DNA from: Prasinococcaceae sp. CCMP 1430
Lineage: Eukaryota; Plantae; Prasinodermophyta
Assembly (NCBI GenBank): GCA_013416795.1
Contig: RQSC01000026.1
Span: forward strand, 383,586-447,585
Reading direction: 5' to 3'
DNA length: 64,000 bases
How positions within the stretch are numbered: position 1 is the first letter of the stretch; every line of letters starts with the position of its first letter. The notes under the pieces were generated by a model. It was not told where the DNA came from, did not search any database, and saw only the letters and a program-made list of their open reading frames with translations. Positions 14,933 to 19,833 of this stretch are shown one piece after another. A program made the translations under genes and the position numbers.

Positions 14933-16100
14933 GCGCGCGGACGCCCTCGCCGCCTCCGCCGCGCTGGGGGCGTCCGCGGACGTGCTGAGGTCGTCGGTGC
15001 GAGCGCTGATGGCGTCGGTGCGAGCGCCGGCGCCGCTGCCGGCGGCGACGCCGTCGGCGACGCTGCTGTCGCTGCTGCGGAGGACGTGGCCCTTCGACGC
15101 GCTGCTGCGCGCGATTGGCGACACCTCACTCTCCTCGATCGCCCGTGACAGGTGGAAATCGCAAATCTTGGCTTCGTGCGCCTCGGTCAGGAGCACGTTG
15201 GCAGGCTTCAGATCCCTGTGCAAGATGCTCTCGGGACTCTGCGCGTGCAGGTGGGTCATGCCGCTCGCCACGCCGGTGGCAATCTTGAGTCGCTCGCGGC
15301 GGGTGACGATGCGCCGCGTGTACTTGCAGAAATTCGCTCTGTCCCTGTGCAGCAATGTATGGAGATCCGTGTGACAATGCTCCCTGTTTGAGCATGCGCA
15401 AGGAGAGGCGGACCGAAGGCGCGAAGTCCTGTCAGCGCCGCGGACGCGAGTCACAGTTCAAAGGAGCGCGCGCGAGGCGGGAGAGTCGCGAGCAAAAGTG
15501 CAAGTCACTGCACGAGCGCCGTCGCAGCGCGTACAAACCGCCATTGAGTCGGGATGGGCGCGCTGCGAGGGGGCCCTGCCCGGCTCCTCATGACACGTAC
15601 ATCACCAACGCGACGTGGTTGTCCTCTTCGCGGTCGCCATCCTCGACGCAAACGCCCATCAGCAAGACGATGTTGGGGTGCCTCACTTGCATGAGGATAT
15701 TCATCTCGGCCTTGAACGCCGCTACCTCTCTTTCGCACTGCTTTCTTCGTTTCGCCACCTCATCGGGACGCCGCGGGCAATCGCCGGAGGCATCGTCGTC
15801 GGCCGCCCGCTGCCCCCACAGAATCGCTTCCATCGCCTTCAGGCGCTTGACTGCCACATCCGTCCCCTCAAAGCGGCCCGTATACACCTCTCCGACGGCG
15901 CCTTCGCCTAGCTTTTTCTTGCCCACGTCGACCTCGCTCCAGGGAATGGAGCGGCAGGGTACGCGATCGATGCCGTCGGATGCCAGCAGTGCCGCCCGGG
16001 CCCCCGTGGCGTCGCTGGTCGAGCCGCCCCCGCCGCCGTGCGGGGCGCCTTCGCCGTGACCACCGGGAGGAGGGCCGCCTGCGGTAGTGGGTTCGTGCAT
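14933..16100 (-). CDS. Tyrosine-kinase-like (Raf/TKL) protein kinase; C-lobe not visible (runs into N-gap)
   Basis: Motifs LGEGAVGEVY, VAVKRL, RHPNIVLLMG, HRDLKPANVLL, KICDFH. Intron 15600-15384 (GTACGT...CAG) restores LVM|EHC. Confidence 0.85.
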
Positions 16101-17880
16101 GCCGCTCGCGCCGCCGGGCGCGCGGCTGTGCGCGGGGCAGGTGTGCTGCCTGCTGTCGCGGCTGACGGGGCGGCCGCTCGAGATTCGCGAGTACGGCGAC
16201 GCGAAGCACGCGCTGGCCGAGGCGCCCGCGGGCTACGACGTGCTCGCGGGGGTCGCCGTGGTGCCCGCCGCCTCGCTCTTCGTGGTCGAAATCAGGAAGG
16301 ACGGCAACCTGGGCTTCCGGAGCGTGGGCGCAGCGGGGCGCATGCTGCAGGCGACCCCGCGCCGTGGCGAGTGCCACCGCGCCGCCAACCACAATTTCGG
16401 CGGCTGGGAGTCGTGGTTTGCCGCGGAAGACGGCACGCTCGTCAACGTCGCGCACCCGCACAAGCAGCTGGCCGCGACCGTGGCGCTCGTCCCGGGAGCG
16501 CTGACCCTGTCGGACCTGCGCGCGCTGGAGAACACGCACGCGCGCTTGGAGCGCGACGCGCGCCTGCGCCTCAAGGCCGTCGAGGACCGCTGCTCGGTCG
16601 AGCAGCGCCGCGTGCGCGAGCTCGAAACGCAGCTCGGCACGATGGGCGCCGAGGAGGATGCCAAGCGCGAAGAGCTGCGGGTTCGCGTGCGCGAGCTCGA
16701 GGCGGCACTCGCGGCGAGCGACAGGAAGCTCAACGACGCGAAGGCCGCGGCGCGCCATCGCGAGGCGAAGGCCGCCGCTGCGGCTGCGGATGCGGAGGAT
16801 GCGCGGTGCCTGCTTCACGAGGCGCAGCGGGAGGCCGCGGCACTGCGCGAGCAGGCCAGCGCCCTGACGGAGGAGCGCGAGGCGATGACCGCGTCGCTGA
16901 TCCACACCAAGGAGGCCGCCGTGCGGGCGCTGAGATGCATCTCAACCCCGAAGAAATCCTCGCCCAGTGCCCGCTCACCCGAGCGCGTCGCGCCGTCCAA
17001 GGGCAAAGGCACCGAGCGCCGCACGCCTTCGACGGTGCTTCTCGATGCCTTCAACTCGCCCGATTCGCCCGTCTCGCCGCCGCAATTGCTCCACACGCGG
17101 CGTGCGCTATCAGACTCGCAGGAACAACGCGAGGAGTACGACCACGACGCGACAGCTCGCGTCCTACTGGCGCCTGGTTCCCCCACGGCCGCGGCCAAGG
17201 CAGCGACGATGACGCGTGACTCTTCGGCGTCCACTCTTGTACCCGACTCCGAGGAGGGTGATAGCTCGCCCGTCGGAGGTAAGGGCAAGCCGAGTGCCGC
17301 CAAGTCTATCTTCGGCAAAAGTGTCTCCGATGTCGGACGCGCCGCTGTGGTGTCTGCCGCAGCAGCTGTCGCCACGGACGACTTTGGAACGCGCAGCGCC
17401 GCTGATGAAATCGCCCTCGCGAGGGCTATGGTCAGTGCCGGATCGTCGCAGCGCCGCCCCTCGCCGGCCGAGGCCGCTGCCGCGGACATTGCGCTCGCAA
17501 AAACGGCGCTGCCTGCCAGGCCAGTCAAACAGCTCAATGAGCTGTGCACGCACATGCTCACCGACCTGCGCGGAGCCACATGGGATGAGGACCCTCTTCT
17601 CGCCAGCTCAAAGTCATCGGACGGCAGCTTCGAGCGCACCCCCTCTGATGGGGATGCCAAAGCGAACGAGCGACGTGCGCCAAAGAAGGGGGCTACCGTT
17701 GCCGCAAAGCCGAGCAGCGCTGCCATCGACAAGCAAGGCGCGCCATCGGGTCGCGGCACCGGCGCGCCGGGCGGCGTCGGCCACGCACCCGCCTCCCGGG
17801 CTACGGCGCCGCAGCAGTCTACGGCGGATGCGCTCTGGGACGTCGATCCGGGCCAGTTCTGCTTCCATGTGTCTCGCTAG
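16099..17880 (+). CDS. Hypothetical protein: N-terminal fascin/beta-trefoil-like domain, coiled coil, Ser/Pro-rich disordered tail
   Basis: Long ORF with host-like codon usage. FVVEIRKDGNLGFRS..GRMLQA..NFGGWESW resembles a beta-trefoil repeat. It is followed by an E/R/A-rich heptad region. Confidence 0.65.
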   Translation: MPLAPPGARLCAGQVCCLLSRLTGRPLEIREYGDAKHALAEAPAGYDVLAGVAVVPAASLFVVEIRKDGNLGFRSVGAAGRMLQATPRRGECHRAANHNFGGWESWFAAEDGTLVNVAHPHKQLAATVALVPGALTLSDLRALENTHARLERDARLRLKAVEDRCSVEQRRVRELETQLGTMGAEEDAKREELRVRVRELEAALAASDRKLNDAKAAARHREAKAAAAAADAEDARCLLHEAQREAAALREQASALTEEREAMTASLIHTKEAAVRALRCISTPKKSSPSARSPERVAPSKGKGTERRTPSTVLLDAFNSPDSPVSPPQLLHTRRALSDSQEQREEYDHDATARVLLAPGSPTAAAKAATMTRDSSASTLVPDSEEGDSSPVGGKGKPSAAKSIFGKSVSDVGRAAVVSAAAAVATDDFGTRSAADEIALARAMVSAGSSQRRPSPAEAAAADIALAKTALPARPVKQLNELCTHMLTDLRGATWDEDPLLASSKSSDGSFERTPSDGDAKANERRAPKKGATVAAKPSSAAIDKQGAPSGRGTGAPGGVGHAPASRATAPQQSTADALWDVDPGQFCFHVSR

Positions 17881-17995: not shown

Positions 17996-19051
17996 TTACT
18001 GTGGCCGCACCTCGGCGAGGAACCTGGCAAAGGTGGGCGCGGCACAGAGCGCTGGCGCGTCCGTGAGCTCCCATAGCAGCTTGACCGGGGAGCTCCCGGG
18101 CCAATACCGGTGGCAGCGTACCCGGCCGAGGAAGTGGTACGGCTCTCCGGGCAGACGGCAGAAGAGGAGGGGGGCGGGAGCGGCGTAGCCGTCGTCGCTG
18201 CCGCCACTGCCGTCGCTCCTTTCCCCCGACGCCAGGAGGCGACGCACGAGCGCGGAGTCCTCCTTCACCTTGGACCCTGCGAACCATGTCATGCGGCAGC
18301 GGGTGCGTTCAACCGCGCCAACGTGCTTTGCACCTGCCTCACCGCTAATACCACCCTCAATTTCCTTGGCCTTGTCCGCATCACCCGCACCCTCCTCAGC
18401 CCCTGCGTAGAAGTCGAAGTTGTTGTCGTAGTTCTTCCACCCGCCATCGACGTTGACGAAGAGCGCGTCGACGTTCGTCCACTCCTGCACACCTGAGTAC
18501 TTGTTGAAGCGCACCGCACCGCCCGCGAGCAGCCGCATGACCGCGTCCTTCATCGCCGCTGTACCCTTGGCCGGCGGGATCTGGCGGCCGAGCCATGCGT
18601 CTACGTCGATAGATGCCTTCATAGCACGGCACGACCCTGGCGCTGGTGCAGGCCCTCGCTCTGGCTCGGTGGCGGCGGCGTGCGGCGGCGCCGACCCAGC
18701 GCCCTCCAGTGCCGGGTCGGCGCTCCACGAGGTGTCGGCGACGCGCGCGGGGGCTCGCGCGCGTGACCACTCGCCTCGACCGTCCTCATCGGGCAGCATA
18801 GCATCCATCTCGGCATACGACAGCGTCGGCATATTGGCGAGTCGGCCGCTGCGACGGGTGGGCTCCGCGCGCGGCTTCTTCTGCTTCGAGGCACGTGCTG
18901 CGGTGCTCTTGCGCTTCTTCGGCGCAGCCCCGAACGTGAGCGCACCACGCACTCCCAGCTCGGCCATGCGCTGCGCGTTGCGCTCCACATTGCGCCGCCG
19001 CGCGAGTTCGTACTCGGTCTCGACTCCGCCACCCGCGCCACTCGCCACCAT
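17996..19051 (-). CDS. Putative nuclear protein: CDCA7/B3-type N-terminal helix + NLS + DUF3427 (SRA/PUA-like) domain
   Basis: N-terminus YELARRRNVERNAQRMAELG..PKKRK..PTRRSGRL..SYAE. C-terminus LFVNV..NYDNNF..MTWFAGSK..LLFCR..YHFLG..PVKLLWEL follows the DUF3427 pattern. Confidence 0.7.
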   Translation of the reverse strand: MVASGAGGGVETEYELARRRNVERNAQRMAELGVRGALTFGAAPKKRKSTAARASKQKKPRAEPTRRSGRLANMPTLSYAEMDAMLPDEDGRGEWSRARAPARVADTSWSADPALEGAGSAPPHAAATEPERGPAPAPGSCRAMKASIDVDAWLGRQIPPAKGTAAMKDAVMRLLAGGAVRFNKYSGVQEWTNVDALFVNVDGGWKNYDNNFDFYAGAEEGAGDADKAKEIEGGISGEAGAKHVGAVERTRCRMTWFAGSKVKEDSALVRRLLASGERSDGSGGSDDGYAAPAPLLFCRLPGEPYHFLGRVRCHRYWPGSSPVKLLWELTDAPALCAAPTFARFLAEVRPQ

Positions 19052-19167
19052 CCCCGCTGCTCCTCAAGCTCCCCTTGCGCCCTTTCTCGCGCTGCGGGTG
19101 CTGGGGCGCCTCCGGCGCTGCGCGGGCCGCGGGTGTGCGCGCCCCACGCGCCCGCGTCGAAAGAGCG

Positions 19168-19169
19168 AT

Positions 19170-19224
<55 letters not shown>

Positions 19225-19833
19225 NTTGAACGAAGGGGTAATCGCGGGTCAGCCGTTCGAACCGCAGCGCTGCGCCGCGCCGCTGCCGCGCACGTGCGCG
19301 CCGCGTGGCGCAAGCAGCGCACACGAACGACCTGCGGCCCGGCGTCGCTCGCCGTGTGCCTGCGCGCGCTGGGCGACGCCGAGGCGACGGAGGAGCGAGT
19401 GCTGGCGACGGGTGACGCGGCGGGCGCTGTTGAGGAGGCTGCCGTCCTCAGGACTGGCGTGACGCTCGCGCAGGCGGCGGCGCTCGCACAGGCATCTGGC
19501 CTGGTCGTGCACGGCCACACGCACGCAGACAGCTTTGTGCGGGTGCAAGACGCCGCAGACGCCTTTCGCGCAGAGCTGGCGTTAGAGGGCCGAGCGGTAT
19601 GCTTGAATTACCACATGGGCGTCCTGGGGCAGTCCCCCAACCTACGCGGGCACCTGTCGCCGCTCGGCGGCCTGCACGAGAGCACGGCGTCGGCGTTGGT
19701 GCTGGACGTGTGGCTGGAGGAGACAGAGCCGGTGTGGGCGCCGCTGGAGGCGCTCGTGGCGAGCATGCAAGAGGTGGACGACGCCAGCGGAAAGCCAAGG
19801 GGGTGGCTGGTCCTGGGCATGGCAGATCAGTAG
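19168..19833 (+). CDS. Phytochelatin-synthase-like papain-fold protein, catalytic domain only
   Basis: KQRTRTTCGPASL (Gln, Cys), GHLSPLGG (His), LVLDV (Asp), PVWAPL, SGKPRGWLV. The N-terminus crosses a 51-nt poly-C run and an N, so it is uncertain. Confidence 0.85.
19174..19224. repeat. Poly-C homopolymer (51 nt) ending at a single N
   Basis: Seen directly. Confidence 0.95.

What the first reader, a model, noticed from the sequence alone, without database searches (positions are those of the whole stretch)
17996..19051. Candidate new methyl-DNA reader: a CDCA7-like helix fused to a bacterial-type DUF3427/SRA domain
Seen: an N-terminal helix YELARRRNVERNAQRMAELG, an NLS (PKKRK) and RRSGRL..SYAE, which is the N-terminal layout of CDCA7 and some plant B3 proteins. 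It is followed by a domain with the DUF3427 signature (LFVNV, Y.N.F, TWF, LLFCR, Y.FLG, P...WEL). Established: DUF3427 is the SRA-like modified-cytosine-binding domain of type IV restriction enzymes such as SauUSI. CDCA7 uses an N-terminal helix to recruit the HELLS/DDM1 remodeller and a zinc finger to read hemimethylated CpG. Inference: a domain-swapped adaptor in which a restriction-system-derived reader replaces the zinc finger and links 5mC to a remodeller, in a CpG-rich algal genome. This is the best candidate here for an undescribed system.
Basis: partly seen in the sequence, partly recalled or inferred. Interest (0 to 1): 0.75.

Follow-up and report, generated by a model that had tools for sequence, protein, structure and literature searches.

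The report
Algal SRA-type reader with HELLS-binding-type helix
This small algal gene joins a bacterial restriction-enzyme-type domain for sensing methylated DNA to the same N-terminal module that CDCA7 uses to bind the HELLS/DDM1 chromatin remodeller, so it is a testable candidate for a second, undescribed methyl-DNA adaptor, found mainly in algal lineages reported to lack CDCA7.

Summary

C-terminal domain (residues 137-351):
- It folds confidently (pLDDT 83) into an SRA-type fold.
- The best solved match is the SauUSI target-recognition domain (Z 11.3, rmsd 2.1 Å). The next 14 matches are all SRA-type modified-cytosine readers.
- The nearest named ESM Atlas clusters carry DUF3427.
- By sequence, membership is marginal. 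Only 1 of 23 relatives reaches PF11907, at 27.0 bits against a cut-off of 27.7.

N-terminal module (helix YExxRxxN[IV]xRNxxxLxxLG, a KR-rich stretch, then RRSxR):
- A profile of it finds 1,950 proteins.
- Partner domains include the CDCA7 zinc finger, WDR76-type WD40, HRDC, B3, PHD and HMG-box.
- It is therefore the CDCA7 HELLS-binding-helix module, but it is not specific to CDCA7.

The fusion is fixed in about 40 eukaryotic proteins from green algae, haptophytes, stramenopiles and a fungus.

Most likely function (inferred, confidence about 0.5): a modified-cytosine reader that recruits HELLS/DDM1. Diatoms and haptophytes are reported to have HELLS and DNMTs but neither CDCA7 nor UHRF1.

DNA binding and remodeller binding are both untested. 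The scan's earlier notes returned no previous finding of this family.

The parts
17996..19051 (-). Complete single-exon ORF of 351 aa (stop codon at 17996-17998)
   Evidence: In-frame stop 4 codons upstream of the ATG. Homologues align end to end. The identical protein P0017 is on record.
18953..19012 (-). HLBH-type amphipathic helix motif, residues 14-33 (YELARRRNVERNAQRMAELG)
   Evidence: AF2 helix 13-31 with pLDDT above 80. Y, E, R and N are invariant across four architectures including CDCA7-type proteins. Profile search.
18869..18922 (-). Lysine/arginine-rich stretch, residues 44-61 (PKKRKSTAARASKQKKPR); probable nuclear localisation signal
   Evidence: Read from the sequence. A KRxR-rich stretch is present at this place in most family members. 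The NLS function is inferred.
18839..18856 (-). RRSGRL motif, residues 66-71; the invariant R-R-S-x-R of the module and a possible HMGN-like arginine anchor for the nucleosome acidic patch
   Evidence: Invariant. Weak Pfam HMG14_17 hit over residues 46-80 (E 0.07). The function is inferred.
18644..18808 (-). Disordered, poorly conserved linker, residues 82-136
   Evidence: pLDDT below 50. Variable in length and sequence. Carries strain polymorphisms.
17999..18643 (-). SRA-like domain of the DUF3427/SauUSI type, residues 137-351
   Evidence: Domain model pLDDT 83.3, pTM 0.82. VIA Z 11.3 to SauUSI 803-953, followed by 14 SRA domains. Atlas structure neighbours carry PF11907. Language-model feature neighbours are DUF3427, SRA_ScoMcrA and AspBHI_N.
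18317..18397 (-). Lineage-specific low-confidence insertion loop, residues 219-245, between the Y.N.F strand and the MTWF strand
   Evidence: pLDDT below 50. Absent or different in most homologues. Carries the I235N and V247G polymorphisms.
18810..19145 (.). Span covered by two seawater metatranscriptome contigs (18810-19030 and 18920-19145, 97-98% identical); covers the 5' coding end and about 94 nt upstream of the ATG
   Evidence: This is weak evidence of transcription, because contigs from RNA libraries can contain DNA.

Best explanation
The gene encodes a small nuclear adaptor made of two conserved modules joined by a disordered linker.

C-terminal domain (137-351): an SRA-type beta-barrel of the bacterial DUF3427/SauUSI kind. 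It most likely binds DNA and flips a modified cytosine (5mC or 5hmC) into an aromatic pocket.

N-terminal module: the one found in CDCA7. Its helix (14-33) is of the 'HELLS-binding helix' type and most likely docks on the N-terminal coiled-coil (CC2/C7BH) of the DDM1/HELLS remodeller. The following RRSGRL motif may anchor on the nucleosome acidic patch.

Together they would bring or activate DDM1/HELLS at methylated chromatin so that DNA methyltransferases can reach nucleosomal DNA. That makes the protein a functional analogue of CDCA7 with a different reader.

Shown here: the fold class, the homology of the N-terminal module, and the fixed fusion across eukaryotic lineages.

Inferred: the DNA ligand, base flipping, the HELLS/DDM1 contact and the acidic-patch contact.
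For: Fold:
- VIA-align ranks SauUSI 7clg_B residues 803-953 first (Z 11.4 and 11.3, rmsd 2.2 and 2.1 Å over 114 residues).
- The next 14 hits are SUVH5, SUVH6, KYP, ScoMcrA, AspBHI, LpnPI, TagI, UHRF1, MspJI, SUVH9, AbaSI and PvuRts1I (Z 9.7 to 7.2). Z then drops to about 5.
- Foldseek ranks SauUSI first, with probability 1.00.
- In the Atlas structure search, 7 of 10 neighbour cluster types carry PF11907.
- In the language-model feature search, the top hit is a DUF3427 cluster (0.90, 176 shared features) and all listed hits are restriction-type SRA families.
- Homologue P0004 hits PF11907 at E 3e-6.
- Literature: the SauUSI TRD is an SRA fold that discriminates 5mC (PMC7913695). DUF3427 fusion proteins bind 5mC/5hmC DNA (PMC6765204).

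N-terminal module:
- The profile search gives 1,950 hits.
- Partner domains include zf-4CXXC_R1, WD40 proteins that a source names WDR76, and HRDC.
- The Y-E-x-x-R...N...L-G...R-R-S-x-R signature is invariant across these architectures.
- Literature: the CDCA7 N-terminal helix is required for HELLS binding, and a fragment containing it retains robust binding (PMC11343034). AF3 places the plant CDCA7 helix on DDM1 CC2 (PMC12718391). The WDR76-LSH/MUS-30/Irc5 interaction is conserved (PMC4714748).

Fusion:
- 20 of 32 C-terminal-family proteins carry the module. Those without it are mostly short fragments or have incomplete or divergent N-termini.
- Eight more representatives among the module hits carry the SRA-like domain.

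Selection: strain polymorphisms fall only in low-confidence or disordered segments, outside the helix, the RRSxR motif and the conserved domain positions.

Context:
- Earlier notes say this genome has CMT-like and DRM-type DNMTs (not re-tested here).
- Diatoms and Emiliania are listed with HELLS, DNMTs and 5mC, but with CDCA7 and UHRF1 'ND'.
Against: - No binding data exist for any member of this family.
- The window protein has no Pfam hit to DUF3427 or SAD_SRA. Only 1 of 23 relatives reaches PF11907, and that hit is below the gathering score (27.0 vs 27.7 bits).
- Profile searches of PDB sequences do not find SauUSI or any SRA domain.
- A residue-level superposition on the SauUSI or SUVH5 pocket could not be made. 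By spacing alone, the position of the base-contacting Asp858 of SauUSI may be an invariant Asn (N210). That could mean a different ligand.
- The module is not CDCA7-specific. It is commoner on HRDC and WD40 proteins.
- An Ectocarpus WDR76-type protein keeps the module, although Ectocarpus is listed with HELLS 'ND'. The module may therefore have a HELLS-independent role.
- The DDM1/HELLS gene of this genome was not examined.
- Evidence of transcription is thin.
Confidence: 0.5

Rival explanations
1. A reader of modified or damaged DNA in a genome-stability pathway that does not act through DDM1/HELLS. The N-terminal module would be a general chromatin or nucleosome tether (helix plus an RRSxR arginine anchor). 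The SRA-like domain would target the protein to lesions or to another modified base such as 5hmU, 5hmC or 6mA.
For: - The module's commonest partners are HRDC and WDR76/Cmr1-type proteins. These are linked to replication stress and repair (PMC4714748).
- WDR76 and HELLS are both listed as acidic-patch interactors.
- RRSGRL resembles the HMGN nucleosome-binding core, and there is a weak HMG14_17 hit.
- Ectocarpus keeps the module although HELLS is listed 'ND'.
- A green-algal cluster of 3'-5' exonuclease-domain proteins is a close structural neighbour of this domain (row 3).
- N210 may replace the cytosine-contacting Asp of SRA domains (by spacing only).
Against: - The only experimentally defined role of this helix type is HELLS binding (PMC11343034).
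- WDR76 itself is a conserved LSH/DDM1-family partner, so its presence supports the HELLS reading as much as this one.
- Characterised DUF3427 and SRA domains read 5mC/5hmC.
Confidence: 0.25
2. A domesticated defence sensor. The bacterial-type reader recognises foreign, differently modified DNA, for example from giant viruses with methylated genomes, and marks or silences it.
For: - The closest structural and feature relatives are restriction-enzyme reader domains.
- DUF3427 fusion proteins restrict T4gt, a phage with 5hmC DNA (PMC6765204).
- The taxonomic distribution among eukaryotes is patchy.
Against: - There is no nuclease, helicase or other effector domain.
- No PADLOC model matches.
- The domain is fused to a chromatin-type module shared with CDCA7 and WDR76.
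- The architecture is conserved across distant eukaryotic lineages, unlike a fast-evolving defence gene.
- The flanking genes are housekeeping genes.
Confidence: 0.1
3. The SRA-like barrel has lost nucleic-acid base-flipping and serves as a protein-binding or unmodified-DNA-binding domain. The resemblance would be a matter of fold only.
For: - Sequence similarity to any characterised SRA or DUF3427 domain is marginal.
- The tool itself cautions that Z of 8-11 is not overwhelming.
- A shared fold does not show a shared function.
Against: - The near-invariant aromatic and polar residues (Y185, N200, N210, F212, W256, R271, R299, Y305) lie in the strands that build the pocket face in SRA domains.
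- All 15 top structural matches are modified-base readers.
Confidence: 0.12
4. Not a functional gene: a chance ORF in GC-rich DNA, or a pseudogene.
For: - GC-rich DNA produces many long spurious ORFs (one search lists 35 overlapping ORFs).
- An assembly gap and a poly-G run lie about 110 nt upstream.
Against: - Full-length homologues exist in several phyla.
- The predicted fold is confident.
- Polymorphisms avoid the conserved parts.
- A homologue is present in the Phaeomonas parva transcriptome.
- Metatranscriptome contigs overlap the 5' end.
Confidence: 0.02

Closest known systems
CDCA7 (class I zf-4CXXC_R1 proteins; the HELLS/DDM1 adaptor mutated in ICF syndrome)
   Same: - Same N-terminal module: HLBH-type helix, basic stretch and RRSxR. 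CDCA7-type proteins P0065 and P0095 match the profile at E 1.6e-11 and 1.1e-9.
- Same overall logic: a small protein with a remodeller-binding helix, a disordered linker and a C-terminal methyl-DNA reader.
   Different: - There is no zf-4CXXC_R1 zinc finger. CDCA7 reads hemimethylated CpG in the major groove (PMC11343034).
- It is not an orthologue of CDCA7.
SauUSI target-recognition domain and the DUF3427 (PF11907) family of type IV restriction systems (McaZI, BwiMMI, EfaL9I, YenY4I)
   Same: - Best structural match (Z 11.3, rmsd 2.1 Å).
- Nearest Atlas clusters by structure and by sequence features.
- Sub-threshold PF11907 hit in a homologue.
   Different: - Eukaryotic.
- No PLD or PD-(D/E)XK nuclease and no helicase.
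- About 10-15% sequence identity.
- Below Pfam's cut-off.
- Fused to a chromatin module instead of an effector.
Eukaryotic SRA/SAD domains (UHRF1, SUVH5/6/9, KRYPTONITE)
   Same: Same fold (Z 8.0-9.7) and the same expected role of reading 5mC in chromatin.
   Different: - No PF02182 match.
- Structurally nearer to the bacterial branch.
- No SET, RING, PHD or Tudor partners.
WDR76/Cmr1 family
   Same: - Shares the N-terminal module.
- WDR76 is a conserved partner of LSH/DDM1-family remodellers (PMC4714748).
- WDR76 is a reported acidic-patch interactor.
   Different: The partner domain is a WD40 propeller, not a DNA-base reader.
HMGN nucleosome-binding domain (RRSARLSA core; recalled from my own knowledge)
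   Same: RRSGRL preceded by a PKKRK-type stretch. Weak Pfam HMG14_17 hit over residues 46-80 (E 0.07).
   Different: The hit is below threshold (14.5 vs 23.5 bits). This is a resemblance only, and acidic-patch binding is untested.

Membership tests
DUF3427 (Pfam PF11907) | Match to the PF11907 profile at or above its gathering score (27.7 bits) | tested here: not met
   The window protein has no hit at E<=1. Of 23 family members, only P0004 matches, at 27.0 bits and E 3.2e-6, over profile positions 136-246 of 280.
DUF3427 (Pfam PF11907) | SRA-like fold of the SauUSI TRD type | tested here: met
   7clg_B residues 803-953 rank first, at Z 11.4 and 11.3 with rmsd 2.2 and 2.1 Å over 114 residues. 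Foldseek ranks SauUSI first with probability 1.00.
DUF3427 (Pfam PF11907) | Nearest predicted-structure and sequence-feature neighbours are DUF3427 proteins | tested here: met
   Atlas rows 2 and 5-10 carry PF11907, with TM 0.54-0.57 by query and 0.80 by target for row 2. The top feature hit is a DUF3427 cluster at 0.90.
DUF3427 (Pfam PF11907) | Binding of 5mC/5hmC DNA through an aromatic pocket with a base-contacting acidic residue (SauUSI Y831, F841, I842, W868, D858) | not testable with these tools
   No residue-level superposition was available. By spacing only, Y185, F198/V199, N210 and W256 are candidate equivalents, with Asn in place of Asp858.
SAD/SRA (Pfam PF02182; UHRF1, SUVH) | Match to the PF02182 profile | tested here: not met
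   No hit in any of the 23 members at E<=1.
SAD/SRA (Pfam PF02182; UHRF1, SUVH) | SRA beta-barrel fold | tested here: met
   SUVH5 Z 9.7, SUVH6 9.3, KYP 9.2, UHRF1 8.0-8.5, SUVH9 7.7.
CDCA7 | zf-4CXXC_R1 hemimethylated-CpG zinc finger (PF10497) | tested here: not met
   No PF10497 hit, and no cysteine cluster in the sequence.
CDCA7 | N-terminal HELLS-binding helix (HLBH) module | tested here: met
   The profile of the module hits zf-4CXXC_R1 proteins P0065 (60.4 bits) and P0095 (54.6 bits), with the motif directly N-terminal of the finger.
CDCA7 | Physical binding and activation of HELLS/DDM1 | not testable with these tools
   No complex prediction or assay was available. The claim is inferred from PMC11343034 and PMC12718391.
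HMGN nucleosome-binding domain (PF01101) | Match to the HMG14_17 profile, or the RRSARLSA core | tested here: inconclusive
   E 0.07, 14.5 bits against a cut-off of 23.5, over residues 46-80. The motif present is RRSGRL.
Anti-phage defence systems (PADLOC-DB) | Match to any PADLOC model | tested here: not met
   0 of 23 members match at E<=1.

The most novel reading that the evidence does not exclude
This family is the missing methyl-cytosine sensor for HELLS in stramenopiles and haptophytes, and an extra one in some green algae and early fungi. These lineages keep HELLS, DNMT5/DNMT6-type methyltransferases and 5mC, but are reported to lack both CDCA7 and UHRF1. A reader of bacterial restriction-enzyme ancestry, attached to the ancient HELLS-binding module, would do CDCA7's job there. 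That would be a non-orthologous replacement at the centre of methylation maintenance. As a corollary, the shared helix + RRSxR module would be a general 'HELLS/DDM1 and nucleosome docking' cassette, used by at least four reader types: the zinc finger, the SRA-like domain, the WDR76 propeller and HRDC.
Probability: 0.3. Interest if true: 0.85.

Novelty: new variant of a known kind. Interest (0 to 1): 0.72.

Why it matters
CDCA7-HELLS is described as the only remodelling complex whose loss abolishes maintenance of DNA methylation. CDCA7 is thought to be the sensor that tells HELLS/DDM1 where hemimethylated DNA is.

Two questions are open:
- How is DDM1/HELLS guided in lineages that have HELLS and DNMTs but no CDCA7 or UHRF1, such as diatoms and haptophytes?
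- Which 'additional methylation readers' account for the CDCA7-independent part of DDM1 function in plants (PMC12718391)?

A conserved eukaryotic family that couples the same HELLS-binding-type module to an SRA-type reader gives a concrete candidate. It can be tested in tractable diatoms.

It would also be a clear case of a restriction-enzyme sensing domain recruited into eukaryotic chromatin biology. And it defines a portable N-terminal module shared by CDCA7 and WDR76, two independently known HELLS-family partners. No description of that sharing was found in the searched literature.

Tried and rejected
- Pfam, NCBIfam and PADLOC scans of the window protein gave nothing useful.
- Single-sequence and profile searches of PDB sequences with the whole protein, the domain (7- and 26-sequence profiles) and the N-terminal module gave only chance hits: enkurin, eL24, IgA protease and a light-harvesting protein.
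- A word search restricted to residues 1-90 found only the protein itself.
- A feature search of the N-terminal 90 residues in the Atlas gave no usable hit.
- I tried to fetch bacterial DUF3427 relatives for a profile-profile bridge and residue mapping onto SauUSI. The genome contigs pattern scan found 14 pattern matches but no relatives. tblastn against plasmids gave only chance hits at E>=1. Residue-level pocket mapping was therefore not possible.
- I tested whether the HRDC-type carriers of the module hide the SRA-like domain. They do not (hhalign probability 0.15).
- A first attempt to cluster the module hits by BLAST failed for a scripting reason and was dropped.
- I looked for DDM1/HELLS or CDCA7 in earlier notes on this genome. 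None was noted.
- The chance-ORF and pseudogene reading was rejected on conservation.
Full report
OBSERVATION. The window is GC-rich (62-72% in 2-kb bins). It holds a 351-aa ORF at 17996-19051 on the minus strand. The ORF is bounded upstream by an in-frame stop 4 codons before the ATG. About 110 nt upstream lies a long poly-G run with an N, which is an assembly gap. The flanking genes are a phytochelatin-synthase-like gene and an aldo/keto reductase, which are unrelated housekeeping genes. Earlier notes of this scan identify the genome as the marine green alga Prasinoderma (coloniale). They also record chromomethylase-like and DRM-type DNA methyltransferases elsewhere in it. I did not re-test those notes.

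THE PROTEIN IS REAL AND BELONGS TO A CONSERVED EUKARYOTIC FAMILY. The word search found the identical or near-identical protein in 18 sequences, plus eight more distant relatives. A profile of the C-terminal domain found 28 proteins. Among them are Prymnesium parvum (haptophyte), Ochromonadaceae sp. CCMP2298 and a Phaeomonas parva transcript (stramenopiles), and Hyaloraphidium curvatum (an early-diverging fungus). In the 23-sequence alignment the same layout recurs: helix motif, KR-rich stretch, RRSxR, variable linker, then the conserved domain. A local HMM check shows that 20 of 32 C-terminal-family proteins carry the N-terminal module. Those without it are mostly short fragments or have incomplete or divergent N-termini. 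Conversely, eight further representatives among the module hits carry the C-terminal domain at E 1e-41 to 1e-62. So the fusion is fixed in this family. Strain variants of the window protein differ only at residues 8, 9, 85, 104, 128, 235, 247, 278 and 279. All of these lie in low-confidence or disordered segments, outside the helix, the RRSxR motif and the conserved domain positions. Two seawater metatranscriptome contigs, 97-98% identical, overlap the 5' end of the gene and reach about 94 nt upstream of the ATG. That is only weak evidence of transcription.

THE C-TERMINAL DOMAIN IS AN SRA FOLD OF THE BACTERIAL DUF3427/SauUSI KIND.
- By sequence, the link is marginal. The window protein has no Pfam hit. 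One homologue, P0004, hits PF11907 at E 3e-6 but at 27.0 bits against a gathering score of 27.7. It is the only one of 23 that does. Profile searches of PDB sequences find nothing.
- By structure, the result is clear. The full-length model and a domain-only model built on 26 sequences (pLDDT 83.3, pTM 0.82) both rank the SauUSI target-recognition domain first (7clg_B residues 803-953; Z 11.4 and 11.3, rmsd 2.2 and 2.1 Å over 114 residues). The next 14 matches are all SRA-type readers of modified cytosine: SUVH5, SUVH6, KRYPTONITE, ScoMcrA, AspBHI, LpnPI, TagI, UHRF1, MspJI, SUVH9, AbaSI and PvuRts1I (Z 9.7 to 7.2). Z then drops to about 5. Foldseek also puts SauUSI first (E 1.8e-3, probability 1.00).
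- In the ESM Atlas, the nearest cluster is a 265-member eukaryotic family, commonest in diatoms (TM 0.69, rmsd 2.0 Å over 163 residues). Seven of the ten neighbour cluster types are bacterial and carry PF11907. One is a green-algal family of 3'-5' exonuclease-domain proteins.
- An independent language-model feature search gives a DUF3427 cluster as best hit (0.90, 176 shared features). Every listed hit belongs to the restriction-type SRA families DUF3427, SRA_ScoMcrA, RE_AspBHI_N or SRA.
- The literature confirms the background. The SauUSI TRD (806-953) is an SRA fold whose modelled pocket (Y831, F841, I842, W868, D858, with M829 inserting) reads 5mC, and the enzyme discriminates methylated DNA (PMC7913695). 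DUF3427 fusion proteins bind 5mC/5hmC DNA (PMC6765204).
- I file the domain as a divergent relative of DUF3427, not a Pfam-defined member.

THE N-TERMINAL MODULE IS THE CDCA7 'HELLS-BINDING HELIX' MODULE, BUT IT IS NOT EXCLUSIVE TO CDCA7. AF2 predicts a confident helix at residues 13-31. A 78-position profile of helix + basic stretch + RRSxR, run against 1.84 billion representative proteins, gave 1,950 hits at E<=1e-3 and 21 at E<=1e-10.

Pfam scans of the best hits show the module on several partner domains:
- HRDC: 18 of 82 hits.
- WD40 propellers: about 12 of 82 hits. One cluster contains a protein that a source names WD repeat-containing protein 76.
- zf-4CXXC_R1, the CDCA7 finger: P0065 at 60.4 bits and P0095 at 54.6 bits.
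- B3, PHD and HMG-box: single cases.

Across these architectures Y, E, R, N, L-G and R-R-S-x-R are invariant or nearly so. The HRDC carriers do not contain the SRA-like domain.

Literature on the module and its partners:
- Wassing et al. showed that the conserved N-terminal helix of CDCA7 (HLBH) is required for HELLS binding, and that a fragment containing it retains robust binding. The helix pairs with the CC2/C7BH helix of HELLS/DDM1 (PMC11343034).
- AF3 places the Arabidopsis CDCA7 helix on DDM1 CC2. The same paper notes that DDM1 may 'depend on additional methylation readers' (PMC12718391).
- A HELLS structure paper proposes that the helix relieves coiled-coil autoinhibition (PMC12885070).
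- WDR76/Cmr1 is a conserved partner of LSH/MUS-30/Irc5 (PMC4714748).

Two independently known HELLS-family partners therefore share this module. That is the main argument that the module docks on HELLS/DDM1. The RRSGRL motif resembles the HMGN nucleosome-binding core (my own knowledge; weak Pfam hit). WDR76 and HELLS are both reported acidic-patch interactors. An arginine-anchor role is therefore a reasonable but untested addition.

MECHANISM PROPOSED. The protein reads modified cytosine through the SRA-like barrel and brings or activates DDM1/HELLS through the helix, possibly stabilised on the nucleosome by RRSGRL. Shown: the fold class, the module homology, the fixed fusion and purifying selection on both modules. 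Inferred: the ligand, base flipping, the remodeller contact and the acidic-patch contact. I put about 0.5 on this whole chain.

WHERE IT MIGHT MATTER MOST. Funabiki and colleagues report that CDCA7 is absent from all SAR genomes except Tribonema. In their source table, Phaeodactylum, Thalassiosira, Fragilariopsis and Emiliania have HELLS, DNMT5/DNMT6 (with DNMT3 and/or DNMT4 in some) and reported 5mC. CDCA7 and UHRF1 are both 'ND' in all four. The family described here is represented in exactly those groups. I have not confirmed that the diatom Atlas cluster itself carries the N-terminal module.

CAVEATS.
1. No biochemical data exist for any member.
2. Residue-level mapping of the pocket could not be done. 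By spacing alone, the invariant N210 may sit where SRA domains have the cytosine-contacting Asp, so the ligand could differ.
3. An Ectocarpus WDR76-type protein retains the module, although Ectocarpus is listed with HELLS and DNMTs 'ND'. The module may therefore have a HELLS-independent role.
4. The DDM1/HELLS and CDCA7 genes of this alga were not examined.
5. The VIA-align notes caution that Z of 8-11 is not by itself overwhelming. The case rests on the homogeneity of the 15 top matches and on agreement between three independent methods.

NOVELTY. The searched literature holds six papers that mention DUF3427, and none concerns eukaryotes. The phrase 'HELLS-binding helix' occurs only in CDCA7 papers. 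Neither this family nor the sharing of the module between CDCA7, WDR76, HRDC and SRA-like proteins was found described. I rate it a new variant of a known kind: a CDCA7-like adaptor with a different, restriction-type reader.

Noticed in passing
Proteins P0054-P0201 (hits); module alignment A8: The helix + RRSxR module is shared by CDCA7-type, WDR76-type WD40, HRDC ('ribonuclease D'-annotated), B3, PHD and HMG-box proteins, with 1,950 hits in all. CDCA7 and WDR76 are both known HELLS-family partners, so this may be a general HELLS/DDM1-and-nucleosome docking cassette. I found no description of it as a shared module.
   Followed up: partly
ESM Atlas cluster, row 3 (no locus): A green-algal (Chlorophyta) cluster of about 500-aa proteins carrying the 3'-5' exonuclease domain DNA_pol_A_exo1 is a close structural neighbour of this domain (TM 0.63, rmsd 3.3 Å over 163 residues). 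That suggests a nuclease-linked eukaryotic version of the same reader.
   Followed up: no
P0116 / P0223 (Ectocarpus): Ectocarpus keeps a WDR76-type protein with the module, although the Funabiki table lists HELLS and DNMTs as not detected in that genus. Either the module has another partner or a HELLS orthologue was missed.
   Followed up: no
P0095 (Lonicera macranthoides KAM7470715.1): This gene model holds two copies of the module. The first precedes a CDCA7 zinc finger and the second precedes an HMG box. It probably merges two neighbouring genes, and it suggests a module + HMG-box architecture in plants.
   Followed up: no
window 19164-19230: A run of about 60 G (poly-C on the plus strand) with one N lies about 110 nt upstream of the ATG. 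It is an assembly gap or homopolymer, and reads appear cut there.
   Followed up: no
The Pfam hits confirm both identities.
   Followed up: partly
window 16087-17880 (+): A 597-aa ORF downstream of the gene has no Pfam hit. By eye, its middle part is rich in Ala, Glu and Arg and looks like a coiled coil.
   Followed up: no
P0007 (alignment columns 245-310): This homologue carries an insertion of about 65 aa of unrelated sequence inside the conserved FSKY motif region. It is most likely an unspliced intron in the gene call, so some family members have introns.
   Followed up: no
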